IMG/VR virus record: IMGVR_UViG_3300020122_000238
Span: 1-64,000 of that record
Length of the DNA stretch: 64,000 nucleotides
Strand: one strand, 5' to 3'
Both the position numbers and the translations under genes were made by a program. How positions within the stretch are numbered: the first letter of the stretch is position 1; every line of letters begins with the position of its first letter. Of this stretch, positions 14,852-33,072 are shown one piece after another. The notes under the pieces were generated by a model. That model was given only the letters and a program-made list of their open reading frames with translations. It was not told the DNA's origin and ran no database searches.

Positions 14852-16132
14852 ATGAAAATCACGCTCAAGCTCGCCGACCTGATCAAGGCCCTCGCCATCG
14901 TTTCGATCGTCCCCCCGCGTCCCCTGACCCCGGCGGGCGGGGCCGGCTACCTCTTCGTCATCCGAATGGGAGGCCTCTGCTCGATCTACTCCCGCGACGC
15001 TCTTCACGTTGCTCGCGCCACGATCTCCTGTGATGAGAAGGAGACCGAGGGGTCCTTCATCTTCCCCTCGGAGTTCACGAGTGGTTTCCGTTTCCTTCGG
15101 GATGACGACATCACGATCGAGTCCAAGGTGGACTCGGACAACTTCACGGTTTCCTGGAGCACGAACTCGGGAGCTGGGGCGGATCGCGCGAGCTTCGATC
15201 CGAAGCTCATGGCCTCGTGTGATCGGGATCTCGCCGGAGCCAAGGATGAACGCTCCTTCCCCGTGGGCCTATTCAAGGAGGCGATGACGCTGGCCAAGCC
15301 CTTCCTTGGGAAGGCCGACGACACGCGGATCCCGGAGCACTTCAAGACGCTCCAGCTCTTCGACAAGTCCAAGCCCGAGTGGGAGAAGGGTTCCGGGCAT
15401 CTCTTCGCTGCGAACACCTTCCAGGCGTTCTGGTTCTACAGCGCTGCCTTTGTCGACAAGGGGTTCTCGATCCACGTCCAGCACATGTCCTTCTTCACAA
15501 GCTTCCTCGCGAAGTCGGATGGAGAGGTGAAGCTCCTGACGGGCGACAACATGATCTTCGCCGTCGACTCCAAGGGGAACGCGCTCGGGTGGGCGAAGCA
15601 CGAGTCCGTTCACGGGAAGTTCTCCTACTACTCGAAGGCGATGGACAAGCTCATCCTCGGGCTCCCCAAGTCGCTGACGGTGGACGCGCTCCGCTTCATG
15701 CGCTCAGAGCTGGATTCCAAGGAAGACAAGATCACTCTGGTCGTCAACGAGTTCCGTGACGTCGAGGTGGGCGAGAAGGTGCAACGCCAAGCAACGATGC
15801 TCTTCCGAGTGGCCGAGACGAAGGGCAAGGCTCGGAGCTTCCCGCTCCCGGCTGTCGTCATCGACGGCTCCGAGGAGCAAGAGATCACCTTCAACGTCAA
15901 CATCGACCGGCTCATCGACCTCATCGACGGCGTGAAGGGCATGGACGTCCAGCTTCGGATCGCGGTCATCAAGGCCGACGACAAGTCCCCCAAGGAACGG
16001 GCCATGTTCCGCACTATCGACGAGTTCCTCATGGACGACAACGGCAAGGTGGTCGGGGACATCACGGCGGAAAACCGGCCGGAAGGGTCGCACGAGTGCC
16101 GCGTAACCAGGTACATGCCCTCGAAGGACTGA
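14852..16132 (+). CDS. dnaN: DNA polymerase sliding clamp (beta-clamp-like)
   Basis: N-terminus MKITLKLADLIKALAIV resembles DnaN; about 430 aa; ends RYMP; dnaX nearby. Confidence 0.6.
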   Translation: MKITLKLADLIKALAIVSIVPPRPLTPAGGAGYLFVIRMGGLCSIYSRDALHVARATISCDEKETEGSFIFPSEFTSGFRFLRDDDITIESKVDSDNFTVSWSTNSGAGADRASFDPKLMASCDRDLAGAKDERSFPVGLFKEAMTLAKPFLGKADDTRIPEHFKTLQLFDKSKPEWEKGSGHLFAANTFQAFWFYSAAFVDKGFSIHVQHMSFFTSFLAKSDGEVKLLTGDNMIFAVDSKGNALGWAKHESVHGKFSYYSKAMDKLILGLPKSLTVDALRFMRSELDSKEDKITLVVNEFRDVEVGEKVQRQATMLFRVAETKGKARSFPLPAVVIDGSEEQEITFNVNIDRLIDLIDGVKGMDVQLRIAVIKADDKSPKERAMFRTIDEFLMDDNGKVVGDITAENRPEGSHECRVTRYMPSKD

Positions 16133-17589: not shown

Positions 17590-18185
17590 GCTTCTCAATC
17601 CTGGAGCAAGTGCTGGTTGTCGACCGGCATCGACAGAGGGCTTCAGGTAAGCAGGGGTTCTCTACCCCCTACCTGTGCACTGCGAAGGTGATCCCCAGCT
17701 CGGTCCCATTGGTGGTCACCAATGCCCGGGGTGGCTTTGTTGGCACAAGGCCTTCCAAGGATGGGGACGCGAGGTATGGCTTCTCCCTCCTCTCAGAGGA
17801 AGGCGATCCTGATGTGCTCGTCCTTGCACTCTATCGGGATGTCCGGGGTCTTTCGACTCAGGGCAACTGGGGGAATCGGTGTAGCTCGGTCCTCGTGGCC
17901 ATGGAGCGTCTCCGAAAATCAGGACTCGAACCGAAGTCCCTCATTCTCTCCTCGGCCCTCCTCAAGGAGGTCTGCGGGGAGAAGGCGGCGTCGGTGAAGG
18001 GTGGATTCGTGACGACCCTGGAGGGCGGTCTCCAGGTCTTCGTTGCAGCTCTTCCGGATGGAGCAGCTCTTGTGCTTCCTTCGCCTGAAAAACTAGGGTT
18101 CTACACGCGAGTGCGTGATTACGTGGGGGTCATGATTCGGCGAGCTGACCAGACGATCATGGTGGTCGGCCGTGACCTGGCTTGA
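17586..18185 (+). CDS. Hypothetical protein with a weak MCP-like C-terminus
   Basis: ATGA overlap; C-terminal half aligns by eye with the MCP at 45652. Confidence 0.55.
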   Translation: MSFSILEQVLVVDRHRQRASGKQGFSTPYLCTAKVIPSSVPLVVTNARGGFVGTRPSKDGDARYGFSLLSEEGDPDVLVLALYRDVRGLSTQGNWGNRCSSVLVAMERLRKSGLEPKSLILSSALLKEVCGEKAASVKGGFVTTLEGGLQVFVAALPDGAALVLPSPEKLGFYTRVRDYVGVMIRRADQTIMVVGRDLA

Positions 18186-18897
18186 CGATTTTGTCGTTGA
18201 ATCTGGAGCTGAACTACCCGACCGTGTCAGGGAATCCTTGTGGGGTCGGGGAGTTACAGACGAGCAGATCAAGCAATTTCAAATTGGGTACATCGACCGG
18301 GTTTTACCAGCGATCAACTACCCCCAAGACTTCGTGTCTTGGTCGGGGGATGGGGGGAAGCTTGACGACTGCTACGTTCTTCCGATTACGAACACCATCG
18401 GTGAGCTTCGAGGCCTCCAATTTCGGCACGTCGAGAGGGAGCGTGGGGGCTACATGGACTTCATTCTCGCTCAGGATGAAGCTGTGGGGTTCGGGCTCGC
18501 TCAGGCAATGCCTACAGTGTGGGAGTCTGGGGAGATCCTTCTGGTAGAAGGCGGGTTCGACCTTCTACCCCTCCAGCGGTTCCTTCCCGGGATTGCTTCA
18601 ACGCTGACTGCTCGGGTCACCGAGGGATTTGTTCGGATCCTACGACGTCTTGTACGCCGCGTGTGGATCGGATATGATATGGATTCGGCCGGAAATAGGG
18701 CGTACGACAGGTTTCGCCAACAGTACGGCCGGGAATTCGATGTTCGTCGGGTAGTTTACCCCCGGGTCACTATGGTCGGCGGTAAGCTGGTCAAGGATCC
18801 TGGAGACCTCTGGGAGGCCTGGGGAGATGCCCGACTTGGTGAGTACCTCCGATCTCATGTGAGGTCGGGTAGCCTGATGGAGTTTCCCTATGGGTAA
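18172..18897 (+). CDS. dnaG: DnaG-type primase (catalytic core/TOPRIM, no zinc-binding domain)
   Basis: RG...FQIGY, VLPI, LVEGGFD, GYDMDSAG, KDPGD. Confidence 0.8.
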   Translation: MTWLDDFVVESGAELPDRVRESLWGRGVTDEQIKQFQIGYIDRVLPAINYPQDFVSWSGDGGKLDDCYVLPITNTIGELRGLQFRHVERERGGYMDFILAQDEAVGFGLAQAMPTVWESGEILLVEGGFDLLPLQRFLPGIASTLTARVTEGFVRILRRLVRRVWIGYDMDSAGNRAYDRFRQQYGREFDVRRVVYPRVTMVGGKLVKDPGDLWEAWGDARLGEYLRSHVRSGSLMEFPYG

Positions 18898-19381
18898 GAT
18901 TTACAGTGTGAGTGAGACGGTCGCAACCATTGCGAAGAACCTGATCCCCGGGTATCACCCGGAGCTGGCCACCGCACGGCTAAAGTACGCCTTCGTGGAC
19001 AAGGGTTCGACGAAGTCTGGCCGTCCCGTCCTCGGCAAGGCACGGAAGCTATCGGGCATCTCGCAGTTCTTCATCGACTGCGACTTCATCATCGAGGTCG
19101 CCGAGGACACCTGGAACGAGCTGACGGAGAACAAGCGAACGGCTCTCATCGATCACCTCCTGGAGCACTGTACGGGGGAGGAAGACGACAAGACCGGGGA
19201 CATGGTCTGGGTTCTCCGTACGCCGGACGTCGAGGAGTTCACCTCGATTCTCCGTCGGCACGGTGCCTGGAACGAGACCCTCACGGCGTTCGCGAGCGTC
19301 GCCAAGGCTATCGAGATCGAAGACATGGTGGACGACATCGTGATGTCGTCCTCCGAAGGGGAGTCCGCTCCGGCGCACTGA
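18890..19381 (+). CDS. Phage putative metallopeptidase-family protein
   Basis: LGKA, DFIIE...W...ALIDHLLEHC, PDVEEF..I.RRHG pattern. Confidence 0.7.
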   Translation: MGKIYSVSETVATIAKNLIPGYHPELATARLKYAFVDKGSTKSGRPVLGKARKLSGISQFFIDCDFIIEVAEDTWNELTENKRTALIDHLLEHCTGEEDDKTGDMVWVLRTPDVEEFTSILRRHGAWNETLTAFASVAKAIEIEDMVDDIVMSSSEGESAPAH

Positions 19382-19387
19382 AAACCT

Positions 19388-19618
19388 GTGTGGGACACCA
19401 ACATCATGAACATCACCCGTGCCGGACGGAAGCTGCCGTCCGGCAGCTCTCTCTTGGCGCGAGCCCCTCATTTGACTCAGGAGTGGAGTCCTGAGAAGAA
19501 CCGAGGGATCCAGCCGGAAGACGTTCATGGTGGTTCCCCATTCGAGGTGCGGTGGGACTGTACGGACATTCCTGGTTGTTTTCGAGAATGTCTCCGTTCA
19601 ATCTCAAGGGAAGTCTAA
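19388..19618 (+). pseudogene. Truncated treble-clef/zinc-ribbon domain (homing-endonuclease remnant)
   Basis: SLL..P.L..EWSPEKN..I.P.DV..GS...V.W.C repeat unit, then the frame degenerates. Confidence 0.6.
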
Positions 19619-19619
19619 C

Positions 19620-21080
19620 GTGTGGGATATTCGTTATCGTCCTCAAAAATTCTCGGACGTCCTCGGCCAGCGAGGCACTGTTCAGATCCTCCAGACGCGA
19701 CTTCGTGATGGGACGGCCCTCAGCAAGAACTACATCTTCGCTGGGGGTCATGGTCAGGGGAAGACGACGCTTGCTCGGATCATGGCCAGGGCCATGTTGT
19801 GCCAAGACCTCGACTTGACCAATCCCGAACCTTGTAACGAGTGCGACAACTGCCTGGAGATTCTCGCCGAAACTTCGCTCGCATTCGTTGAGCGGGATGC
19901 GGCGAGCTGCGGGACTGTCGACCACATGCGAGCCCTTGTCGAGGAGCTGCCCTTCGCGGTCTACGGGGCCTCGAAGCGGATCCACCTCTTCGATGAGGCG
20001 CATCGCATGACCCGGGATGCACAGGATGTTCTCCTCAAGCCGTTGGAGGAGAACAAGCTCGTCGGGATCTTCTGCACTACGGAGGTGGAGAAGATCCGAG
20101 CGACGATTCGGTCCCGGTGCGAAGACTACGTCATTCGAAAGGTGACCCGCGAAGACATCCTCGTGAGGATGAAGTCCATCCTCACAGCGGAAGGTGTCTC
20201 CTTCGAGGATGACGCTGTGCTTACCGTCATTGACTATTCGGGGGGACACGTTCGGGATGTCCTCAACCGGCTGGAGATGATCGGGCAAATGGGGGATGTC
20301 AATCTCGCCAACGTGCGGGAGTACCTTCGCCTCCCGCTCGTCTCGACGTACTACGAGATCATGCTCTCGCTTGGGAACCCCCAACGTGCGATCGAGTTGG
20401 TGGGACAGGCTTGTGAGCAGGTCTCTCCTCAAGATGTGGCTGATGGCATCGCCGAAGCGGCGATGAATTCCTACCGGATGGCGAACAACATGTTCGCCGA
20501 CTTCGTCTACGTTGACCGAGCGCTCGGTCAGAAGGTCTACGAAGCGTTCGGCGTGAGCACCCTCAAGCTCTCGGAGTACTTCCTTCAGCGGCGGAACACC
20601 ACAAGGGTGAACCTCTTCTGCGACATCCTCAATCTGGCCGGAGGTATCCCTGCTCCTTCGGCTGTTGGGGTTCCCATGGCACCTCCCATTCAGGTGGTAA
20701 CGGCAGCTCCGGTTCAGGCCACGGCTCCTGTTCAAGCTCCGGTGATCAGCTTGATCGACGCAGTGTCCGCACACCCCGGTTTGGCGGTCCCGGTTGGAAG
20801 CGTTTCGCCGGCTGTCCAGGTCTTGCCTGAAGTGAAGAAGCCGGAGAAGAAGCCCGACGGGACTCGGTTCGATGGGGTGGGCCCCATCGGTTCTGGCGAC
20901 GTCTGCGCCCTGACTGAGCTGGATCACAAGGGCGTCCCTGTGAACAAAGCTCGGGGCCGCAATCACGTCCATGTCCCGGTTTCTTTCCCCCGACGTGGGG
21001 ATCCGGCAGACGACCTTCGTATGTTGACTCCGGATGAATGGCGGCGAGAGTTCGAGCGAACTTGGCCCAGCCGAGGATAG
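19620..21080 (+). CDS. dnaX: DNA polymerase III gamma/tau clamp loader
   Basis: RYRPQKFSDVLGQ, GGHGQGKTT, C..EPCNEC..C, FDEAH, TIRSRC, GHVRD. Confidence 0.92.
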   Translation: MWDIRYRPQKFSDVLGQRGTVQILQTRLRDGTALSKNYIFAGGHGQGKTTLARIMARAMLCQDLDLTNPEPCNECDNCLEILAETSLAFVERDAASCGTVDHMRALVEELPFAVYGASKRIHLFDEAHRMTRDAQDVLLKPLEENKLVGIFCTTEVEKIRATIRSRCEDYVIRKVTREDILVRMKSILTAEGVSFEDDAVLTVIDYSGGHVRDVLNRLEMIGQMGDVNLANVREYLRLPLVSTYYEIMLSLGNPQRAIELVGQACEQVSPQDVADGIAEAAMNSYRMANNMFADFVYVDRALGQKVYEAFGVSTLKLSEYFLQRRNTTRVNLFCDILNLAGGIPAPSAVGVPMAPPIQVVTAAPVQATAPVQAPVISLIDAVSAHPGLAVPVGSVSPAVQVLPEVKKPEKKPDGTRFDGVGPIGSGDVCALTELDHKGVPVNKARGRNHVHVPVSFPRRGDPADDLRMLTPDEWRREFERTWPSRG

Positions 21081-21083
21081 TCC

Positions 21084-23060
21084 ATGGCATCACGCCAAAT
21101 CAAACCTGTCATTGACCTCACAAAGCCTTCGGAGTGGGTTGCTCTTGAGCTTGGGCCCAAGGCGGATGGTGAAGACCCGGATCTCATTAAGCAGTCCATT
21201 CGTCACCACCTCCGAGACGCGGACGTGTTCATTCCAGCGTCCGTCACTCAGGTGGGCGGGGACAGGGTCATTCAGTACCTCCTCGAAGGGTATGCTTTCA
21301 TTCGGCGGGCTCATGCTGAGGAGAAGTACTACCGGCTCGAAGGGAGCAAGTACGTTCAGGGGGTCATCAGCCACGTCGACCGAAGTCGCTTTCGGTCGAC
21401 ACGCCGGATTGCGTACGTCCCGGATCATGAGGTCTCCAGGCTACGACGGCAGATCGAGGCACAGGAGAACCAGGGGATCGAGGTGGGGGACCTCGTGCTC
21501 ATCCTATCGGGGCCTTACCGGCTGATCAAGGCGAAGGTCATCGAGGACATTCCAGAAAAGGACGAGGTCCAAGTTTACATTCAGCTCCGCTCCAAGGAGT
21601 CTCTCATCACCTTCCCCCGAGCTGGGCTCAGGCTTGTCGCGAAGGGGGAGAAGAATTTTCTGACCTACCAGACCCGATGGATGACCCTTCAGCAATGGGG
21701 AGAGGCTGCTTTCCCTGTCATGCAGTGGTCCTCGGATGGTTTTGATGGGATCCTTGATGGGCTGGCGTCCTACACAATGCTCGATGTGTGGACCACCAAA
21801 GAGCGGACTCTTCTCGATCAAGACTTGGTCGCTGGTTACGCGCTCGATTTCGACCCCCTTCGGTTGGAGCTACTCTGGGGGGAGCACGCCAAGCTATCGA
21901 CGTGGATTTCGGCGGGGCAGAAGCAGGTGAACTTCCTTCGAGCGATGTCTTCGACTCCTTCCACGGAGCATTTGCTTCAGCTTGGTGAAGAGGTCCAACG
22001 TCTCTCTAGATGGACTACGGCCGTCAACCAGTTGGTGACGGCCGTCCGAGCCTTCAACATAACCCCCTCTCTCACTCCCATCGAATCGCGGTATCTCGAA
22101 TTGGAGTGGCTCCAGGACATTCAGCTCCGGTTGAAGGCCTTGAGCGACAAGTTGACGGACATAGAAGACGATGTGGAAGACCCTGCAATGACCCAAAATC
22201 TCATCATCGACGGCAACAATCTCGCGGTTCGCTGTGGGCGGGCTCCTGGACTCGATCAGCTCAAGGATAAGCAGGGGCGTCCTTCTGGAGTGGTGACGGG
22301 GTTCCTTCGGAGCCTGGGGGCTCTTCGCAAGAGGTTCCCCAAGGCCACCATCTACGTTTGCTGGGACTACTCCTCGCAGCGTCGTATGAGCACCTTCCCC
22401 GGGTACAAGGCGGGGAGGACTCCCTTCGAGGGACGCGACCAGATCGAGTGGCTGAAGGCAGCCCTACCGTCTTTTGGGGTCGTCCAGGCCTACAACGAGG
22501 TGGAAGAGGCCGACGATGCCATCGCGACTCTCGTCTCGGGTCGCCTCAAGGAGGATGTGAACGTCATCCTCTCGAACGACCGGGATCTTCTCCAGCTCGT
22601 GACTGCAACGACGACTGTCCTCGCTCCTTCGAGTGGTCTCCGCCCCGAGAAGCTCTTCGATGTCGATGCCGTGAAGGAGGAATACGGGGTTCCTCCGGGC
22701 AAGATGGTCTACTTCCGGGCCATGTCGGGAGACAGCTCGGACAAGATTCCTGGTGTTTTCAGGCTCCAGGAGAAGACCATCGTGCATTTGATCCGTACAT
22801 ACGGATCCATTGATGGCGTTTTTTCATCTTCTCTGCCAGAGTTGACGAAATCTCAGCAAGAGAAGATTCGTGCCTCTGAGGCACAGGTCAGGAAGAACGT
22901 GGGGCTCATGGCCCTCGTCTCGAACCTGGACCTTACTTTCGTCCACCCGATGACGAACCCGGAGGCAGCCTCGAAGCACCTCCAAGATGTTGATGTGAAG
23001 GTCGAGCCGATGTTGACGGCGTTCTTCCGTCTGGCGGAGTCCCCTACGAATACAACGTAG
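21084..23060 (+). CDS. NusG-like (NGN+KOW) domain fused to a PolA-type 5'-3' exonuclease
   Basis: VFIP, EGYAFI, VGDLVLILSGPY (KOW); from 22188 IIDGNN, YKAGR, EADD, SNDRDLLQL, GDSSDKIPGV. Confidence 0.85.
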   Translation: MASRQIKPVIDLTKPSEWVALELGPKADGEDPDLIKQSIRHHLRDADVFIPASVTQVGGDRVIQYLLEGYAFIRRAHAEEKYYRLEGSKYVQGVISHVDRSRFRSTRRIAYVPDHEVSRLRRQIEAQENQGIEVGDLVLILSGPYRLIKAKVIEDIPEKDEVQVYIQLRSKESLITFPRAGLRLVAKGEKNFLTYQTRWMTLQQWGEAAFPVMQWSSDGFDGILDGLASYTMLDVWTTKERTLLDQDLVAGYALDFDPLRLELLWGEHAKLSTWISAGQKQVNFLRAMSSTPSTEHLLQLGEEVQRLSRWTTAVNQLVTAVRAFNITPSLTPIESRYLELEWLQDIQLRLKALSDKLTDIEDDVEDPAMTQNLIIDGNNLAVRCGRAPGLDQLKDKQGRPSGVVTGFLRSLGALRKRFPKATIYVCWDYSSQRRMSTFPGYKAGRTPFEGRDQIEWLKAALPSFGVVQAYNEVEEADDAIATLVSGRLKEDVNVILSNDRDLLQLVTATTTVLAPSSGLRPEKLFDVDAVKEEYGVPPGKMVYFRAMSGDSSDKIPGVFRLQEKTIVHLIRTYGSIDGVFSSSLPELTKSQQEKIRASEAQVRKNVGLMALVSNLDLTFVHPMTNPEAASKHLQDVDVKVEPMLTAFFRLAESPTNTT

Positions 23061-23071
23061 GCGGAAGGAAA

Positions 23072-23782
23072 ATGATGTCGACTGGATACGTGATTTCGGT
23101 AGACCCGGCTACTTTGGCCAACCGCTTTCCTTCTGGTCGAGGGAACGAGGAGGAAGACCTCCTCCTCGATCGTCTCCAGATTCTTGAGGACACGGCTGCG
23201 GGCCTCATTCAAGAAGAGGATGACGATGATCCCATTGCAGAGTTCCTCTACTCGGGGGACTACGAAGATCGTCTGGCTCCGCTTCTAGATCGCATCCCCA
23301 AAAGGGAAGCCGATCTCATCTACCTCTACTACATTCAGAAGAAGCGTCAGGCGGATATCGCCGAGATCTTCGACGTCACCCAAGCCGCCATCTCCTATCG
23401 TCTCGATCGGGGTCTTCAGAGGATCAAGTTCCTCCTGTCGATCCCCCAAGTCACTGAGACCGAGCTTCGGCGCGACCTTCCCCTCATTCAAGATGGTCAT
23501 CTCAAGCCTGCGTTCAAGGCCATCGATGTGGACATCTTGGTGGGGATGTGGTCGACGACCTGTCAGAGCGAAGTGGCGATGCGACTCGGCTTGACTCAGG
23601 GTCGAGTCCGGCATCGGTTCTTCAAGGCGGTGAAGCTTCTTGGTGAGGCCTCGGGGAAGGATGGTCGCTTCCTTCGCTATCACAAGGTCTTCGCTGCCAT
23701 TTCGAACAAGAAGTTCAACATCCTCCGTGAGGTGAAGCTCCCCCAGTGGGCGGACCGGGGAGGCGATGCTCTTGACGGGTAG
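23072..23782 (+). CDS. Sigma-70 region-4-like protein with two HTH motifs
   Basis: READLIYLYY...QADIAEIFDVTQAAISYR and QSEVAMRLGLTQGRVRHR. Confidence 0.75.
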   Translation: MMSTGYVISVDPATLANRFPSGRGNEEEDLLLDRLQILEDTAAGLIQEEDDDDPIAEFLYSGDYEDRLAPLLDRIPKREADLIYLYYIQKKRQADIAEIFDVTQAAISYRLDRGLQRIKFLLSIPQVTETELRRDLPLIQDGHLKPAFKAIDVDILVGMWSTTCQSEVAMRLGLTQGRVRHRFFKAVKLLGEASGKDGRFLRYHKVFAAISNKKFNILREVKLPQWADRGGDALDG

Positions 23783-24030
23783 GTAGCCCCTGAGAGGGCG
23801 GAAGGTACGCATCGGAACATCGCCTCCGTGATCCATGCCCTTTCCAAAGCAGACCCTATGCCAGGTCCAGAGACATCGGGGTAGCCTGGCATTTTCGTAT
23901 TTCGCTTCGTCTGAAGGGTGCTCTTGTCGCGGCACCCTGCCCCACTGGGGCATGAAATCTCGAAACACGGCTGTTTTCCAGCCAACATCAGTGTTTTCTT
24001 TTATCGTTTACGCAGAGATGAGGCCGAGCC

Positions 24031-24933
24031 TTGCCTATCTCTGCGTCCAATCTCCAAACCCAAGAATACCAGTTCAAAGTCCAGACCCCCTCCGGTCTGT
24101 GGCGGTGGACGACTCGCGTCGATCTTTCGCAGGCAACCCCTGCCTACCAGATCCGTGACATCACCACCCCCTACGGTCTTCTTCGAGACTCGGTCCCCCT
24201 TCCCGGCGCTGTGGTCCAGGAGATGGGCAATTCGATTACGCTGCTCCAGCAACAGTTCGCCCCGTCGATTCTGTTGGGGTTGTCGAGCCTGACTTTTGTG
24301 GTCGATGAGGGTCGAGGCTTCAGTCTCCCCCAAGATATACAGATCACCAACAACGGAGTCTTCGGGTCTCTCCTCGGAACGGTGCTTACAACCTCCGCTT
24401 CCTGGGTGACGGTGGACCCCCAACGGGTGGGTGGGCTTGCCTCGGGTTCTGCGGGAGCCTCAAGCGTTGCTGTGGACTCTACGACGCTCGTGTCTGCGAA
24501 CAGCCCCTATGCAGCCACGATCCTGATTCAGGACCCGTCTGCGGTGAACACTCCGCAGACGGTCTCTATCGCGATTGTGGTTCGGCCGTTGGCCATCATC
24601 AGCCTCAACCCCACTGCTCTCAACTTCGCTGTTGTGAAGCCGATCAGCGGTCCGTTTTCTGGGGTTCTGACCCAAACCTTCCAGATCACCAACACAGGTC
24701 CGACGGGATCTCTTCTCGACTACCAGATCCAAAAACTCTGTGGGTGTACGGATTGGTTGTTTTCCTTCAACCCCCCGTACAACACCCTTGCCTCTGGGGC
24801 CTCGCAAACGACAACGGTCAGGGTTCAGCCCCCGGACACGATGTGTCCGGGGACCTATACAGAGACCCTACGCGTGAGCGGGTACAGTCAGAACTACACT
24901 CAAGACGTCGTTGTGACTCTTGTCATTTCATGA
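24031..24933 (+). CDS. BACON/Ig-like domain virion protein
   Basis: Two beta-rich repeats (ITNxG...W...P....LASG.S...V......G.Y...I). Confidence 0.7.
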   Translation: MPISASNLQTQEYQFKVQTPSGLWRWTTRVDLSQATPAYQIRDITTPYGLLRDSVPLPGAVVQEMGNSITLLQQQFAPSILLGLSSLTFVVDEGRGFSLPQDIQITNNGVFGSLLGTVLTTSASWVTVDPQRVGGLASGSAGASSVAVDSTTLVSANSPYAATILIQDPSAVNTPQTVSIAIVVRPLAIISLNPTALNFAVVKPISGPFSGVLTQTFQITNTGPTGSLLDYQIQKLCGCTDWLFSFNPPYNTLASGASQTTTVRVQPPDTMCPGTYTETLRVSGYSQNYTQDVVVTLVIS

Positions 24934-24939
24934 GGATCC

Positions 24940-25206
24940 ATGGCCAACTTTGATCTCAGCCAAATTCAGATCTCCGGGGCATCTGGCTTCGATTCTCTGT
25001 TCGATCGGGAACCGCAGATCGTGAAGCCCCTCAAGACCACTCGGCGACGAGTGGCGTCCCTTCAGGACCTTAAGGGGTTCCAGAGGGTTTCTGAGGACAC
25101 GCTGGTCCGAAAGAGCGACAACGACCTCTGGGCGATCCGCAAGGAATCGAACGGGTCCTTCTTCATCGAGCGCTTGTTTGATGATGTCGAGCCTGTGAAG
25201 GGGTGA
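24940..25206 (+). CDS. Hypothetical head-region protein
   Basis: GAGG RBS; 88 aa. Confidence 0.75.
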   Translation: MANFDLSQIQISGASGFDSLFDREPQIVKPLKTTRRRVASLQDLKGFQRVSEDTLVRKSDNDLWAIRKESNGSFFIERLFDDVEPVKG

Positions 25207-26255
25207 GCGGATCCATGGTGGCGTACAAGAAGACGTTGGCGGCTCTCGCAAAGAACGAGCGTATGAGGCTCGCAGCGGGTCCTGTATTGCCTCCTGACCC
25301 CTCTGGGGCACCTGGCGGGGCACCTCCTGGCGGGATGGCTCCTTCTCCTTTCGCGGACAATGCGAAGCGGACCATCCCGGCGAACTTCAAGTTCGACCCC
25401 CATTCGCTCAAGCCTCTTGCGCAGACCCTCTGGGCCTTGTCGATCTCCCTTGGCCACACACTGACGGCACACCGTCAGTTCGCCCGGGTGAAGTCTGCGA
25501 CGGTATCTCCGGATGGGATGCTGGGTGGACGTGGGTACGTCATGGGGGTCAAGGACATTCGGCAGCGTCTCTACGAGGCGTCCGAAGCTCTTTCGGCCAT
25601 CTGCGACACGATTCACGACGAGATCAACGCGCCCCATTGGAAGCCCCGGCTTGCCGAGCTGGAGAAGGATGAGGCGGATGACCTGAAGCGCCTTCTCACC
25701 GACGCCGAAGACAATCTCCAGAATCCTGAAGAGGAAGCTGAAGAGGACATGGAGGCTGTTGAAAACGGTGAGAAGGACAAGGGGCCTGGGGGAGGCAAGG
25801 ACGTCTCTTGGAAGCCTGGAGGGGATGAGCGTTTCGACAAGCAGGAACCTGCCTCTTCGGTCCCTTCGGGAGGCGACCAGGAGACTCTGCATCGAGGCGG
25901 GCCCAAGCCTCCGAGCAAGAAGCAGGCGTCTTCACGCTACTCCTACGACTACACAGGCGGTCCTGTGGCGGAGTCGGGTCTCCCGAACGATGGCGAAGAC
26001 GCTGTTGATCGGGCCGATTACTACCGGGGGCCGAAGGGCAACGGAGTCGCAATGGGGCCCGTGTCTGAGTCCGAGCTTCCTTCGGCGGATGGTGGTCCGC
26101 CGAAGGAGGACATCGACCTCCCCAATACCAGCCTTCGTGGGAAAGACCCCAGCAACCAACGTCCGAACTGGGATTCTCCGGTACACGAAACGTACATTCG
26201 CGACCCTTATCAGAGGCTCGACGATGCGATGATGAGGAGGGTTCCCCGTGGGTGA
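25203..26255 (+). CDS. Hypothetical acidic/Pro-rich protein
   Basis: Overlap-coupled 350-aa ORF. Confidence 0.75.
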   Translation: MSGSMVAYKKTLAALAKNERMRLAAGPVLPPDPSGAPGGAPPGGMAPSPFADNAKRTIPANFKFDPHSLKPLAQTLWALSISLGHTLTAHRQFARVKSATVSPDGMLGGRGYVMGVKDIRQRLYEASEALSAICDTIHDEINAPHWKPRLAELEKDEADDLKRLLTDAEDNLQNPEEEAEEDMEAVENGEKDKGPGGGKDVSWKPGGDERFDKQEPASSVPSGGDQETLHRGGPKPPSKKQASSRYSYDYTGGPVAESGLPNDGEDAVDRADYYRGPKGNGVAMGPVSESELPSADGGPPKEDIDLPNTSLRGKDPSNQRPNWDSPVHETYIRDPYQRLDDAMMRRVPRG

Positions 26256-29679: not shown

Positions 29680-32600
29680 ATGGCATCCCCCAAAACCAAA
29701 GCTGAGAATGCTGGGACGAGCCTTGCAGCGCTCGTTCGAACAGCAGGGCAGCAGGCAAAGACAACGGTTGTTGAGAACCTCGAAAAGGAGGCCCTCTCCC
29801 AAATCGAGGTCGTCGATGGGGACCCCCCGGCTCAAGTACGGCCCGCGACGGCTCGTATTTTCAGCATCCTCGACTACATCGAACAGCCTTGGGGGTTGAA
29901 TCTCACCCTCTATCCTGTCCAGAAATTCATCGTCAAGCTCTACTACCACCTACCGTTGGAAAGCAAGGTCAAGACCATTGAGGTCAAGGACATGTTCAAT
30001 ACGGTTCTGTTGCACCATTTCACCGAAGTGGAGTACCTCAAGTTCTTGTACGAAGATGGCCGTTGCAACATCGGCGTACAGGATCATATACGCCGAGAAC
30101 TCCTACTTTCCATAGGTCGTCGTGGGGGAAAATGTGTTACAGGTGACACATTGGTCCTCACCGACCATGGTATCATTCCTATTGAAGAGCTGGGTACAGC
30201 TTCGAAAGAGGACTTCTCTGAATTGAAAGTTGGTGTTGCTCAGGAAGGATCTACCTTGTCTGAGTCCTCCCACTTCTACAATGGTGGGGTGAAGCCGACA
30301 TACCGTCTTCGTACGAAGGCTGGGTATTCGATCTGCGGTACGGGAAATCACCGCGTTCGAGTCATGACTTCCTCAGGCAAAGTCGACTGGCGGTATCTCG
30401 ATGAGCTACGTCAAGGAGACTTCGTCGCGATCCATCGTGGGACGGACTTGTGGGCTTCCGAGAATCTCGACCTTGAGCCTTTCCACAACGGAGATGGTCA
30501 CAAGGATGTCAAGCTTCCTGGTGTTCTGGATGAGAAGCTTGGAAACCTGCTCGGGTATCTAGTCGGGGATGGTACTTGGGGGGACGGGCACGCTATCTCT
30601 CTCACGGTCGAGCACCACGAGACGTGGCGTCATCTTCGATCTCTCATTTCAGAAGTGTTCGGGGCTCCCCGCGTCCAGATGGACAAGCGGACGAAGAATA
30701 CAGGGCGGATCGAGTTCTGTAGCGTCCGAGCCCGAAGGTTCCTTGACGCATTGGGGTGGTCTCTCGATTGTACCCGAGACACCAAGATGATCCCTTGGGC
30801 CATCCTACGGTCTCCCAAGACGGTCGTCTGTGCCTTCCTCAGGGGTCTTTTTGAGACGGACGGCTGCGCTGAGTCTGGTGGGAGGAAGGTTACTTTCTCC
30901 ACCGCCAGCTTCCAGTTGGCTCATGAGGTTCAGGTAGTTCTCTTGAACCTTGGGATTGTGTCTAGTGTTCACCGTAAATGGAACACCAAGACTGAGCGTT
31001 ATTACGCTTATCTGAATTTGCTTGGGGTTCGATCTCGACGTCGGTTCGCAGAACTCGTCGGATTTGATTCGCTTAAAAAGCAACGCCCCCTGCTTGCATC
31101 TCTTCTCGTTGCTGAGGAAGGGAAGTCGGATACAGAGAGCATTCCTCATCAGTACCGAAGGGTGCGAGATCTTCTTGAGTCTATTCCCAAGCGGAACCCG
31201 AGTCGTGGCGAGATGGGCTGGGGTCGATCGAAGCTCCGCCAGGCTATTGGTAATACCTGCAAGCCTGGTTCTGGGGAAGACTTGACGTATCATCGTCTAG
31301 CCAAAGCAATCAAAATCGCAGATGAGCTGGCGGCGAGGCATACCGAGATTGCTCATTTCGAAGAGCTTCTTCGTCTCGATTACTTTTACGATCCAGTGAC
31401 TTCTGTGGAAGAAGGGGAGGATCAGGTCTACGATCTCTCTGTCCCTGTGGGTACATCCTTTGTTGCCAACGGGATGACGAACCACAACACAACATTATCG
31501 GGAATTTTCGCGAGCTATGAGGTCTACCGACTTCTGAATTTGGGGAACCCCCAAGGATACTACGGTCTTCCGAACGGTAACCGTATTCAGATCGTCAGCA
31601 TCGCGACGGACAAGGATCAGGCAGGTCTTCTCTTCAACGAGGTGACCTCACACTTGAGTCGTTGCGAGTACTTCAAGCCCTACATCGCCAACAACACCCT
31701 GAGCCACATTCAGTTCAGGACCCCCCACGACATCGAGAAGTACGGGGCGACAAGCCGGCACGAGAACGGCAAGTTCACCTCGTTCAACGGCAAGGCGACC
31801 ATGAGGGTCACCTTCAAGTCCTGTATCGCGAAGGGGCTTCGTGGCGCGGGTAATGCTGTCGTCATCATGGACGAGATGGCCCACTTCAAGGACACGGGGC
31901 AGTCGAGTGCGAAGGACATCTACGACGCCGTCACTCCTTCTACCGCCGCTTTCTCCCCGAAGGACCCCAACGACACGACGAAGCCAATTGGTGACGTCGA
32001 GGCTCGGGTTATCGCTATTTCGTCGCCTCTCAACAAGCAGGGGAAGTTCTACGAGCTGTATCACCAAGCAATGAGCGGAGGTGAGCCGGCCAAGAATATG
32101 ATCGCGATTCAAGCTCCGACATGGGAAATCAATCCCACGGTTCCTGCCGACTACTACCGGCAGAAGTACCACGCCGATCCTCTGGTCTTCATGACCGAGC
32201 ACGGGGCGCAATTCTCTGATCGTGTCCGTGGTTGGATCGAACGAGAGGTGGATCTCCTGGACTGCATTGATGCAAACCTACGTCCCAAGGAGGCGGGGCG
32301 TCCTCGTGAACCACACCAGATGGGGATCGACATCGGGCTCATGGGGGACGGGACGTCGATTTTCATCACTCATGTCGAGAACAACGAGATCGTTCTGGAC
32401 TACCATGAGTCGTGGTATGCTGGTGTGGACTGGCGTGAGACGAATTCCCATCTTGGGGGTTCCCCCTCGATGGCCTATGCCCGCGGCCTGAAGGACGTCG
32501 AGCGCCTGGACTTCGAGGAGATCGGGAACTGGATCGAGAACCTGACCAAGAGGTTCTTCATCACCGCCGGGATCTTCGACCGTTGGAACGGTATCCCGCT

Positions 32601-33072
32601 GGAGCAGGCTCTCAACAAGAAGGGGCTCAAGCAGTTCAAGTCGGAACACTTCAAGCGCGACTTGTCGAGCCAGATATACCAGAACACGAAGCTCATGATG
32701 TTCGACCGGAAGCTCCGTCTCTATGACTGGCCCAAGGCCACGGTCGGGAACCGGCACTCTCCTTTCATTCAGGAGTTGCTGGGCCTTCAGGCTGAACAGG
32801 TCTCTCGGAACTTGGTCATCGTCTCGGCTTCTGAGACGGTTGGCCAGCATGACGACATGGCTGACGCCTTCGTTCGAGCCGTGTGGCTGTCTGCTCAGCG
32901 CATGACGAATACCCGGCTCGCTCTTGGTCCTTCGGACAGTCGCGGTCAGACGGGGATGGGCATGTCGCTCGCTCGCTACCAGATGGCTCGAGCCCGCAAC
33001 CACGGTGGGTTCTCACAGCGGGTCGTGCCGAGGGGCAGCGGCATGGGGCTTCGGTCGCGAGGAGGCCGGTAG
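29680..33072 (+). CDS. terL: Terminase large subunit, intein-containing
   Basis: Walker A GRRGGK|TT interrupted by the intein, Walker B VIMDEMAH, ISSP, nuclease GIDIG...HDDMADA. Confidence 0.92.
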   Translation: MASPKTKAENAGTSLAALVRTAGQQAKTTVVENLEKEALSQIEVVDGDPPAQVRPATARIFSILDYIEQPWGLNLTLYPVQKFIVKLYYHLPLESKVKTIEVKDMFNTVLLHHFTEVEYLKFLYEDGRCNIGVQDHIRRELLLSIGRRGGKCVTGDTLVLTDHGIIPIEELGTASKEDFSELKVGVAQEGSTLSESSHFYNGGVKPTYRLRTKAGYSICGTGNHRVRVMTSSGKVDWRYLDELRQGDFVAIHRGTDLWASENLDLEPFHNGDGHKDVKLPGVLDEKLGNLLGYLVGDGTWGDGHAISLTVEHHETWRHLRSLISEVFGAPRVQMDKRTKNTGRIEFCSVRARRFLDALGWSLDCTRDTKMIPWAILRSPKTVVCAFLRGLFETDGCAESGGRKVTFSTASFQLAHEVQVVLLNLGIVSSVHRKWNTKTERYYAYLNLLGVRSRRRFAELVGFDSLKKQRPLLASLLVAEEGKSDTESIPHQYRRVRDLLESIPKRNPSRGEMGWGRSKLRQAIGNTCKPGSGEDLTYHRLAKAIKIADELAARHTEIAHFEELLRLDYFYDPVTSVEEGEDQVYDLSVPVGTSFVANGMTNHNTTLSGIFASYEVYRLLNLGNPQGYYGLPNGNRIQIVSIATDKDQAGLLFNEVTSHLSRCEYFKPYIANNTLSHIQFRTPHDIEKYGATSRHENGKFTSFNGKATMRVTFKSCIAKGLRGAGNAVVIMDEMAHFKDTGQSSAKDIYDAVTPSTAAFSPKDPNDTTKPIGDVEARVIAISSPLNKQGKFYELYHQAMSGGEPAKNMIAIQAPTWEINPTVPADYYRQKYHADPLVFMTEHGAQFSDRVRGWIEREVDLLDCIDANLRPKEAGRPREPHQMGIDIGLMGDGTSIFITHVENNEIVLDYHESWYAGVDWRETNSHLGGSPSMAYARGLKDVERLDFEEIGNWIENLTKRFFITAGIFDRWNGIPLEQALNKKGLKQFKSEHFKRDLSSQIYQNTKLMMFDRKLRLYDWPKATVGNRHSPFIQELLGLQAEQVSRNLVIVSASETVGQHDDMADAFVRAVWLSAQRMTNTRLALGPSDSRGQTGMGMSLARYQMARARNHGGFSQRVVPRGSGMGLRSRGGR
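30133..31488 (+). mobile_element. Intein with LAGLIDADG homing endonuclease (452 aa)
   Basis: Starts CVTGDT, block B TGNH, LLGYLVGDG and FLRGLFETDG, ends VYDLSV...ANGMTNHN followed by Thr+1. Confidence 0.95.

What the first reader, a model, noticed from the sequence alone, without database searches (positions are those of the whole stretch)
21084..23060. NusG-family transcription factor fused to a PolA-type 5' flap nuclease
Seen: one uninterrupted frame holds NGN+KOW (about aa 15-185), a Trp-rich helical repeat linker, and a complete 5'-3' exonuclease beginning at an internal ATG (22188, MTQNLIIDG). It lies between dnaX and a sigma-like gene. Inference: the fusion could tether a nuclease to elongating RNA polymerase (R-loop or primer removal, replication-coupled late transcription). 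Alternatively it is a recent stop-loss fusion that still yields two products.
Basis: partly seen in the sequence, partly recalled or inferred. Interest (0 to 1): 0.6.

Follow-up and report, generated by a model that had tools for sequence, protein, structure and literature searches.

The report
Huge-phage NusG-like factor fused to flap endonuclease
A clade of very large environmental phages joins a NusG-type transcription factor to the phage's only flap endonuclease through a long tryptophan-rich helical arm, an old and conserved fusion that probably links transcription by the host RNA polymerase to DNA replication.

Summary
Window 21084-23060 (+) is one uninterrupted 658-aa ORF. Residues 1-190 are a NusG-type NGN+KOW module, supported by a family profile against solved NusG (E 4e-11) and by an AlphaFold model (pLDDT 93) whose top structural hits are all NusG/RfaH/Spt5. 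Residues 191-368 are an acidic, Trp-rich helical arm with no known fold. Residues 369-658 are a Pol I-type flap endonuclease with all acidic metal ligands invariant.

The fusion is not recent. About 100 full-length homologues (35-58% identity) exist, and 70 of 78 related viral loci are fused, on contigs up to 659 kb. The gene order is always clamp loader, NusG-FEN, sigma-region-4 protein.

A few lineages split the gene again, and those splits are nested inside the fused clade. Distant relatives keep a short stand-alone NusG-like gene next to the sigma-4 gene, with or without a separate FEN. One relative fuses a sigma factor to the same NusG-like domain.

Near-complete relatives encode no detectable RNA polymerase and no other FEN. 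An in-frame start codon is kept at the FEN boundary in most members, so a free FEN may also be made.

Tethering of the nuclease to RNA polymerase is inferred, not shown.

The parts
21084..23060 (+). Whole fusion ORF, 658 aa (P0001), stop included
   Evidence: about 100 full-length homologues
21132..21467 (+). NGN domain (about aa 17-128), with family-invariant P51, Y70 and F72 (the GY.F strand)
   Evidence: AlphaFold pLDDT 93; Foldseek NusG/RfaH/Spt5; profile against 2lq8 E 4e-11; invariants
21477..21641 (+). KOW domain (about aa 132-186), with conserved G135, V138, G143 and the L-R-S-K loop (S170 invariant)
   Evidence: (KOW in 61 of 93 members)
21654..22187 (+). Acidic, Trp-rich helical arm (aa 191-368): five long helices, conserved W205, W215, W236, W310, W342; no known fold
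   Evidence: purifying selection
22188..22190 (+). In-frame ATG (codon 369) at the position of the ancestral FEN start; possible internal initiation site, with a weak Shine-Dalgarno in this genome
22188..23057 (+). Pol I-type 5' flap endonuclease (aa 369-658): PF02739 at 22200-22688 and H3TH PF01367 at 22689-22940. Invariant D376, E475, D477, D478, D499, D501, D550, D553, K442, R445
19527..21080 (+). Clamp-loader ATPase, first gene of the three-gene unit; ends 3 nt before the fusion ORF
   Evidence: conserved synteny
23072..23782 (+). Sigma region-4 protein (a second HTH inferred from the alignment, no sigma-2), starting 11 nt after the fusion ORF; the constant partner of the NusG-like gene
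   Evidence: downstream of the NusG-like gene in 78 of 78 loci and next to stand-alone relatives
14852..16132 (+). Probable sliding clamp (426 aa) of the same replication module (context)
   Evidence: phrog_947 E 6.5e-5; conserved about 5 kb from the fusion gene in five relatives

Best explanation
The gene encodes a two-function protein that is ancestral to a clade of huge phages (contigs 0.14-0.66 Mb).

Shown:
(1) An N-terminal phage-specific NusG paralogue (NGN+KOW).
(2) A family-specific, acidic, Trp-rich helical arm of 122-209 aa.
(3) A catalytically intact Pol I-type flap endonuclease, which is the only such nuclease in near-complete relatives.
(4) A fixed operon position: clamp loader, this gene, sigma region-4 protein.
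(5) The NusG-like and sigma-4 pair is older than the FEN addition.

Inferred: the NGN domain docks on the beta-prime clamp helices of the host RNA polymerase, as NusG and RfaH do, and works with the sigma-4 partner as a phage transcription module. The helical arm keeps the flap endonuclease within reach of the transcribing polymerase. There it can cut 5' flaps and RNA-DNA junctions where transcription and replication share a template, such as R-loops, transcripts used as primers, or lagging-strand primers. Phage transcription and replication would thereby be coupled.

In many members, less clearly in this window, a conserved internal start probably also yields free FEN for ordinary Okazaki-fragment processing.
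For: Fold and homology of the NusG part.

Invariant NGN and KOW motifs (W18, P51, Y70, S170, P178; F72 in at least 90%) across fused, split, stand-alone and sigma-fused relatives. From knowledge of NusG/RfaH, the GY.F strand lines the pocket that binds the clamp helices.

Nuclease intact.

Fusion conserved: about 100 homologues; 70 of 78 viral loci; fissions nested within the fused clade.

All three parts are under purifying selection against a 95% relative. Substitutions by codon position are NGN 7/4/49, arm 11/7/28, FEN 6/3/27.

Arm: conserved Trp positions and helices, absent from the FEN-less relatives.

Link to transcription: the sigma-4 gene follows in every locus, and P0176 fuses sigma-2+sigma-4 to the same NusG-like domain.

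No RNA polymerase beta subunit was found in five relatives that are 94-100% complete, and each has a single PF02739 match, in the fusion gene or the split FEN.

Complex test, NGN aa 14-128 with E. coli RpoC 250-330: weak support. Score 0.57, best control 0.00. The mark was reached by 58 of 80 solved complexes and 2 of 110 mismatched pairs, but scores of 0.60 or under came from only 7 of those 80 and from both mismatches. Runs agree in at least 88% of contacts; partner pLDDT at least 84.

Internal start: in-frame ATG in 42 of 54 against 13% expected; Shine-Dalgarno pairing -5.1 against -3.1 background and -6.5 at real starts.
Against: No experiment or expression data exist; no RNA run holds the gene.

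The NusG match of the single sequence is below curated cut-offs.

The complex score is weak, may reflect memory of solved NusG-RNAP complexes, and used a non-host polymerase.

At least two lineages split the gene and persist, so the covalent link is dispensable.

If this is the only FEN, it must serve every Okazaki fragment, which sits badly with permanent attachment to RNA polymerase unless a free form exists. The window's own internal start has weak Shine-Dalgarno pairing (-3.3).

Very divergent phage RNA polymerases of the phiKZ type could escape PF00562, so reliance on host polymerase is not proven.

The arm model has pTM 0.29, so its reach and shape are unknown.
Confidence: 0.45

Rival explanations
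1. Co-encoded but functionally independent. The NusG-like module with its arm acts with the sigma-4 protein on RNA polymerase. The FEN acts at the replication fork, as the fused protein or as an internally initiated free form. The fusion persists because the genes were adjacent and co-expressed, not because tethering matters.
For: In outgroup relatives the genes are adjacent but separate (L083, L085, L087), or the FEN is absent from the locus (L084, L088, P0188, P0191). Secondary fissions are tolerated. A start codon is retained at the FEN boundary. It is the only FEN in complete relatives, so it is needed for replication anyway.
Against: A neutral stop-loss fusion would give a short joint, not a 122-209-aa helical domain with conserved tryptophans under purifying selection. 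The fused state was kept in 55 non-redundant lineages down to about 40% identity of the NGN-KOW part. In split forms the FEN stays immediately downstream, overlapping by 4-44 nt, which suggests matched co-expression.
Confidence: 0.3
2. Replication-coupled late transcription of the T4 type. The FEN domain recognises nicks or flaps, or binds the phage sliding clamp on replicated DNA. Through the arm it brings polymerase modified by the NusG-like and sigma-4 proteins to replicating genomes, switching on the structural genes that start just downstream.
For: The operon begins with the clamp loader, a probable clamp lies 5 kb upstream, and the cassette sits between the replication/recombination module and a downstream block of mostly unannotated genes (one Ig-like-domain protein; an intein-bearing MJ0330_N gene) that I take to be structural. 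By homology the NGN would bind the beta-prime clamp helices and sigma-4 the beta flap. From knowledge, T4 gp55 and gp33 use those same two sites together with the gp45 clamp. A sigma fused to the NusG-like domain exists.
Against: The FEN catalytic residues are invariant, which a pure DNA or clamp anchor would not need. No clamp-binding motif was established; the C-terminal L..FF stretch probably corresponds to the ordinary last helix of Pol I 5' nucleases. NusG-family factors are known as elongation factors, not initiation factors. No late promoters were identified.
Confidence: 0.15
3. RNA-directed role. The tethered 5'-3' nuclease cuts or degrades nascent RNA behind the polymerase (torpedo-like termination or transcript processing), as nucleases recruited through Spt5 do in archaea and eukaryotes.
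For: Archaeal Spt5 recruits the nuclease FttA to the elongation complex for termination (PMC11616081, found). Pol I-type 5' nucleases cut RNA flaps and RNA-DNA hybrids (knowledge).
Against: This family acts on structure-specific DNA or hybrid substrates and is not known to degrade single-stranded RNA processively. It is the phage's only FEN, which points to a DNA replication role.
Confidence: 0.06
4. Artefact: an assembly or sequencing error joined two genes.
For: None found. Raw reads of the source sample were not available.
Against: The same 1977-nt ORF is present in two other samples. Contigs from four studies cross the junction without indels. About 100 fused homologues exist. Third-position substitution bias runs across the joint.
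Confidence: 0.01

Closest known systems
Bacterial NusG and its specialised paralogues (RfaH, LoaP, UpxY)
   Same: Two-domain NGN+KOW architecture and fold. The signature GY.F strand and KOW glycines are conserved. The KOW is predicted as a beta-barrel, as in NusG. Like the paralogues, it is encoded by a mobile element with very long co-directional operons.
   Different: Below the curated NusG cut-offs. Carries a 180-aa helical arm and a nuclease after the KOW. Always paired with a sigma region-4 gene and a clamp loader. No recruitment site such as ops is known.
Pol I N-terminal 5' nuclease / stand-alone bacterial and phage FENs (M. smegmatis Pol I 6vde and FenA 6c33, Taq, Xni, SPO1-like phage exonucleases)
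   Same: Both Pfam domains, all acidic ligands, the Y-K-A-x-R arch residues and the H3TH G-D-x-S-D motif. E 3e-28 to 6vde. About 33% identity to SPO1-group phage FENs.
   Different: Attached at its N-terminus to a transcription-factor module instead of being free or preceding a polymerase. The phage family-A polymerase is a separate gene without this domain.
Stand-alone phage NusG-like proteins (phrog_6386; BFVD entries named NusG or RfaH from uncultured Caudovirales)
   Same: Same fold and weak profile match. The nearest stand-alone relatives sit in the same clamp loader, NusG-like, sigma-4 cassette.
   Different: 146-241 aa, with no arm and no nuclease.
Spt5-recruited nucleases (archaeal FttA/aCPSF1, PMC11616081; eukaryotic Rat1/Xrn2, from knowledge)
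   Same: A NusG/Spt5-family factor places a 5'-3' nuclease on the elongation complex. This is a resemblance in logic only.
   Different: Non-covalent recruitment, unrelated nuclease folds, RNA substrates, and a termination function. None of this was tested here.
T4 late transcription machinery (gp55, gp33, gp45 clamp, gp44/62 loader; from knowledge)
   Same: Small phage proteins expected to occupy the beta-prime clamp-helix and beta-flap sites of host polymerase, genetically associated with clamp loading. This is a resemblance in logic only.
   Different: No sequence relation. Here the clamp-helix binder is NusG-like rather than sigma-2-like, and a nuclease is attached.
T7 gene 4A/4B (internal start giving a truncated isoform; from knowledge)
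   Same: A phage replication gene that may yield a full-length and an N-terminally truncated product from an in-frame internal start.
   Different: Internal initiation here is only inferred from start-codon and Shine-Dalgarno conservation.

Membership tests
NusG/Spt5 family | NGN domain fold (alpha/beta with four-stranded sheet) | tested here: met
   AlphaFold pLDDT 93. Foldseek top hits are all NusG/RfaH/Spt5, E down to 3e-8, probability 1.0.
NusG/Spt5 family | KOW domain (five-stranded barrel with KOW glycine motif) following the NGN | tested here: met
   Strands at aa 137-186. KOW Pfam hit in 61 of 93 members. 2mi6 KOW aligned at rmsd 1.1.
NusG/Spt5 family | Score above the curated family cut-offs (Pfam PF02357/PF00467; TIGR00922) | tested here: not met
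   17.1 against 22.2 bits, 16.5 against 22.3, and 25.7 against 135.7. Best E among members is 2e-6 for each family. The family profile hits solved NusG at E 4e-11. It is a divergent paralogue, not an orthologue of housekeeping NusG.
NusG/Spt5 family | Binding of the NGN to the RNA polymerase clamp helices | tested here: inconclusive
   Complex prediction gave weak support: 0.57 against a best control of 0.00 (58 of 80 solved and 2 of 110 mismatched pairs reach the mark; scores at or under 0.60 are weak). The signature aromatic residues are invariant.
Pol I-type 5'-3' exonuclease / flap endonuclease (FEN) family | N-terminal PIN-like nuclease domain and H3TH domain above Pfam cut-offs | tested here: met
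   PF02739 95 bits (cut-off 34.3); PF01367 50.5 bits (cut-off 40).
Pol I-type 5'-3' exonuclease / flap endonuclease (FEN) family | Conserved acidic metal ligands and arch Lys/Arg | tested here: met
   D376, E475, D477, D478, D499, D501, D550, D553, K442 and R445 are invariant in 93 sequences. Aligned to Pol I 6vde.
Pol I-type 5'-3' exonuclease / flap endonuclease (FEN) family | Structure-specific 5' nuclease activity | not testable with these tools
   Needs an enzyme assay.
Specialised NusG paralogues (RfaH/LoaP/UpxY type) | Curated model match, and recruitment by a specific DNA or RNA element in target operons | tested here: not met
   LoaP model 21 bits against a cut-off of 125; UpxY 15 against 100. 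A recruitment element was not sought.
Sigma-70 family (for the downstream partner, 23072-23782) | Region 2 (core binding and -10 recognition) together with region 4 | tested here: not met
   Only region 4 was detected (PF04545 E 2.5e-13; SigF sigma-4 E 1.2e-7). A second HTH is present but no sigma-2, so it is sigma-4-like and not a complete sigma factor.

The most novel reading that the evidence does not exclude
The cassette (clamp loader, NusG-like-arm-FEN, sigma-4-like protein) is a replication-coupled transcription machine. It would be built from different parts than T4's, but on the same logic. The NGN takes the beta-prime clamp-helix site and the sigma-4-like protein takes the beta-flap site of host polymerase. 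The flap endonuclease reads nicks, flaps or the clamp on newly replicated DNA, so that late genes of a half-megabase genome are transcribed only from replicating templates.
Probability: 0.13. Interest if true: 0.85.

Novelty: new variant of a known kind. Interest (0 to 1): 0.6.

Why it matters
NusG is the only transcription factor conserved in all domains of life. In the papers I could search, no covalent union of a NusG-family factor with a DNA-replication nuclease has been described; only automatic JGI product names record both halves.

The fusion is old and is kept in dozens of huge-phage lineages. It sits in one operon with a clamp loader and a sigma-4-like protein. A separate fusion of sigma to the same NusG-like domain also exists. 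Together these give a concrete, testable handle on two questions: how phages with genomes of 0.3-0.6 Mb coordinate transcription by a borrowed polymerase with their own replication, and how conflicts or R-loops are handled on very long co-directional operons.

The Trp-rich arm is a new domain without a known fold.

If tethering turns out to be irrelevant, the locus is still a clean natural case of gene fusion, re-fission and possible internal initiation.

Tried and rejected
Linker fold: VIA-align wide search gave only generic coiled coils (Z at most 6.2). Foldseek against PDB gave no match at all. The Atlas feature search had no usable hit. Pfam, PHROGs and NCBIfam gave nothing credible. The fold is therefore left unassigned.

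Promoter and terminator scan of 18000-25500: counts were no higher than in shuffles. The hairpin at 19420-19445 upstream of the clamp loader is not conserved in position among relatives, so nothing was built on it.

Reads: no run holds more than 15% of the gene's words, and none is RNA. Only contigs of a ~93% relative could be laid, so expression, transcript ends and the internal start could not be examined.

DnaN family PF00712 in the own contig: none. A weaker PHROG hit suggests a divergent clamp instead.

Single-subunit RNA polymerase PF00940: no hit, but the control genomes did not ring either, so this negative result is uninformative.

dnaX-like -1 frameshifting at the A-runs of the split junction in L001 was rejected, because the FEN frame is +1 relative to the NusG frame.

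The C-terminal L..FF motif was considered as a PIP or clamp-binding motif. It was set aside because it lies where Pol I 5' nucleases have their ordinary last helix, and it is not invariant.

Cultured phages (INPHARED): only the FEN part finds relatives, and no fused gene was found.

Literature: five searches found no paper on such a fusion.

No alternative genetic code was needed or used.
Full report
OBSERVATION. Window 21084-23060 (+) is a single ATG-initiated ORF of 658 aa with no internal stop. The C-terminal 290 aa are an unambiguous Pol I-type 5' nuclease: PF02739 at aa 373-535 (E 5e-27), PF01367 at aa 536-619 (E 3e-13), and Pol I N-terminal models at E 5e-44. The closest solved relative is the 5' nuclease of M. 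smegmatis Pol I (6vde, E 3e-28). The in-frame ATG at 22188 is codon 369, four residues before the start of the nuclease domain.

For this one sequence the N-terminal NusG signal is weak and below curated cut-offs. It becomes firm at family level. A profile of 93 homologous N-termini matches Thermotoga NusG (2lq8) at E 4e-11 over both domains. Pfam finds KOW in 61 and NusG in 49 of the 93 members. An AlphaFold model of aa 1-190 (pLDDT 93, pTM 0.77) has only NusG, RfaH and Spt5 among its best Foldseek matches.

The middle part (aa 191-368) is predicted as five long helices (pLDDT 87, but pTM 0.29). It is acidic and Trp-rich: 4.5% here and 3.6% on family average, against 0.6-0.9% in the flanks. 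Tryptophans are conserved at 205, 215, 236, 310 and 342. It has no recognisable fold.

The neighbours are a clamp-loader ATPase 3 nt upstream and a sigma region-4 protein 11 nt downstream.

IS THE FRAME REAL? The record is an IMG/VR virus contig of 275,300 bp, about 58% complete, and the window is its first 64 kb. Two other samples hold a 95%-identical gene of exactly the same length (L011, L012). Contigs of a ~93% relative from four studies cross the junction without indels. The only indels are a +1/-1 pair six bases apart at 21433/21439. Differences from L011 fall mainly on third codon positions in all three parts: 7/4/49, 11/7/28 and 6/3/27. Raw reads of the source sample and RNA data were not available.

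HOW WIDESPREAD, HOW OLD. The word search found about 100 clusters of full-length homologues (35-58% identity, 96% coverage, 590-680 aa), many on contigs of 0.2-0.66 Mb. JGI's automatic names already read '5'-3' exonuclease/transcription antitermination factor NusG'. No paper in the held library describes the fusion, and no cultured phage has it.

An exhaustive profile search with the NGN-KOW part has no length filter. It returned the fused proteins, about a dozen proteins with NusG and arm but no nuclease (285-386 aa), and many stand-alone NusG-sized proteins of 165-190 aa.

In 78 related IMG/VR loci the order is invariably clamp loader, NusG-like, sigma-4-like:
- 70 loci are fused.
- 3 have NusG(-arm) and FEN as separate overlapping genes: L016 with an ATGA overlap, L029 and L058.
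- 3 distant loci have a short NusG-like gene followed by a separate FEN (L083, L085, L087).
- 2 have no FEN there at all (L084, L088).

A split form was found identically in two independent samples, so splitting is real. On a tree of the NGN-KOW domain the split-with-arm forms are nested inside the fused clade: L016 is sister to fused L017 with support 96, and L029+L058 sit inside a fully supported fused group. The short forms are the outgroup. Thus the fusion is ancestral to the clade and was undone at least twice. It is not a recent stop-loss.

WHAT THE NusG-LIKE MODULE IS TIED TO. Stand-alone relatives (P0188, P0191) also sit directly before a sigma-4 gene, and P0191 sits after metallopeptidase and clamp loader. 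One relative (P0176) carries sigma-2 and sigma-4 fused to the same NusG-like domain, which is 42% identical to the window's.

The sigma-4-like partner is highly conserved. It has a true sigma region 4 (SigF sigma-4, E 1.2e-7), what looks like a second HTH, and no sigma-2. The residues that mark the NGN and KOW are invariant in fused, split, stand-alone and sigma-fused versions alike: W18, P51, Y70 of the GY.F strand, the KOW glycines, S170 and P178 (F72 in at least 90%).

So the ancient unit is a NusG-like factor plus a sigma-4-like protein. That is a transcription module embedded in the replication gene block, which also holds RecA, an SbcCD-like pair, PD-(D/E)XK, a probable clamp, primase and the clamp loader. 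The FEN and the arm are a later addition in one clade.

WHICH POLYMERASE, WHICH NUCLEASE. Five relatives of 437-529 kb, 94-100% complete, have no match to the RNA polymerase beta subunit, and neither does the window's contig. Very divergent phage polymerases could escape this model. Taken at face value, though, the NusG-like domain must act on host polymerase.

Each of the five relatives has exactly one Pol I-type 5' nuclease match, and it is the fusion gene or the split FEN. The window's contig encodes a separate family-A DNA polymerase, and the only 5' nuclease domain found on the contig is the fusion gene's. All metal ligands, the arch Lys/Arg and the H3TH motif are invariant in 93 sequences, so the domain is an active enzyme and not a relic.

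ONE PRODUCT OR TWO. At the alignment column of M369, Met occurs in 39 of 93 proteins. In 54 non-redundant fused genes an in-frame ATG lies within nine codons of the nuclease N-terminus in 42, against about 13% expected from Met frequency. Some start codon is present in 52. The surrounding residues are otherwise poorly conserved.

Pairing to the anti-Shine-Dalgarno upstream of these codons averages -5.1 kcal/mol. That lies between background in-frame positions (-3.1; p 5e-8) and real gene starts (-6.5). In this window the value is only -3.3, against about -5.7 for neighbouring genes.

This is the position where free FEN genes and the re-split genes start. I read it as moderate evidence that many members also make a free FEN. 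It is weak evidence for this particular genome. The sequences are related, so the p-values overstate independence.

MECHANISM. Shown: the domain identities, their conservation, the operon, the age of the fusion, the link to sigma-like proteins, and the lack of another FEN.

Inferred by homology: the NGN binds the beta-prime clamp helices. The one complex job (NGN aa 14-128 with E. coli RpoC 250-330) gave weak support, with score 0.57 and best control 0.00. In the tool's calibration 58 of 80 solved complexes and 2 of 110 mismatched pairs reach the mark, but scores of 0.60 or less are weak. The result may also reflect memory of solved NusG complexes.

My best reading (0.45) is a polymerase-tethered flap endonuclease that couples transcription with replication on long co-directional operons, with a free FEN isoform in many members.

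The main rival (0.30) is that the two halves work independently and the link is convenient but not mechanistic. The structured, selected arm and the long retention of the fusion argue against that. The viable fissions argue for it.

A T4-like replication-coupled late transcription device (0.15) fits the clamp-loader and sigma-4 context and the position next to a downstream block of mostly unannotated genes that I take to be structural. It does not explain why catalysis is conserved.

A torpedo-like RNA role (0.06) rests only on analogy with Spt5-recruited nucleases (PMC11616081). An artefact is excluded for practical purposes.

COMPARISON AND NOVELTY. Each half belongs to a well-known superfamily. 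The N-terminal half is a divergent paralogue that fails the curated NusG, LoaP and UpxY models but has the fold and motifs. The C-terminal half is a regular member of the FEN family. New here are the architecture (NusG-like, Trp-rich arm, FEN), its fixed partnership with a sigma-4-like protein and a clamp loader, and its restriction to a clade of huge phages from sediment, microbial mat, soil and freshwater metagenomes. I rate it a new variant of a known kind, interest 0.6.

LIMITS. There is no expression or biochemical evidence. The host is unknown. The arm's three-dimensional arrangement is unresolved. The complex test used a surrogate polymerase. Start codons of neighbouring ORFs in the locus survey were taken by a first-start heuristic. 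Only sequences given by the tools were used, and table 11 throughout.

Noticed in passing
L090:3612-5237 (protein P0176): A 541-aa protein with sigma-70 region 2, region 4 and then the same phage NusG-like NGN-KOW domain (42% identical to the window's), on an 18-kb phage-like contig with a helicase and Ku. It is an independent fusion tying this NusG-like family to sigma factors.
   Followed up: partly
window 18890-23782; L001, L005, L006, L091 and L011-L088: The cassette metallopeptidase (PF18894), clamp loader, NusG-like, sigma-4-like is conserved far beyond the fused clade, including relatives with a 171-aa stand-alone NusG-like gene and no FEN.
   Followed up: yes
window 23072-23782: The 'sigma-like' gene is not a full sigma. 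It has an acidic N-terminus with a conserved G-Y-V-I-P-V-D-P motif, one true sigma-4 HTH, what looks like a second HTH (T-T-C-Q-S ... R-V-R-H-R-F-F) and a conserved tail (F-N-I-L-R-E-V-K-L-P-Q-W). It is more conserved than the fusion protein itself (43% mean column identity).
   Followed up: partly
window about 29680-33072: A 1130-aa gene with an MJ0330_N domain carries an intein (Intein_splicing plus LAGLIDADG) here and in L006, but the orthologue is 652-669 aa without an intein in L001 and L005.
   Followed up: no
L028:1278-3992, L038:1242-3980, L042:1234-4008: The clamp-loader ORF is about 900 aa in these relatives, against about 480-520 elsewhere. An insertion such as an intein is possible.
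   Followed up: no
L001:11100-11165: In one split relative the NusG-arm ORF ends and the FEN ORF begins (+1 frame, 26-nt overlap) beside runs of A (A5, A6). I cannot tell whether it is a true fission, an indel error or slippage. A different split form (P0137) is confirmed in two samples.
   Followed up: partly
window 21433-21439: The ~93% relative found in sediment and mat runs has a +1 insertion and a -1 deletion six bases apart inside the NGN. The frame is locally shifted for two codons and then restored.
   Followed up: no
window 14852-16132: A 426-aa ORF weakly matching a DNA polymerase processivity factor (phrog_947, E 6.5e-5), not detected by the DnaN Pfam model. It is conserved about 5 kb from the fusion gene in five complete relatives, and in G001 it matches as two pieces.
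   Followed up: partly
window 1-64000: Nearly all long ORFs lie on the + strand with positive cumulative GC skew, and no tRNA gene was found. GC is 54-63% (mostly 57-61%) throughout.
   Followed up: no
window 19420-19445: A 10-bp GC-rich hairpin followed by a T/C-rich tail lies in the 145-nt gap before the clamp-loader gene. It might be a terminator or attenuator ahead of the operon that encodes the NusG-like factor. The gap is absent in several relatives.
   Followed up: partly
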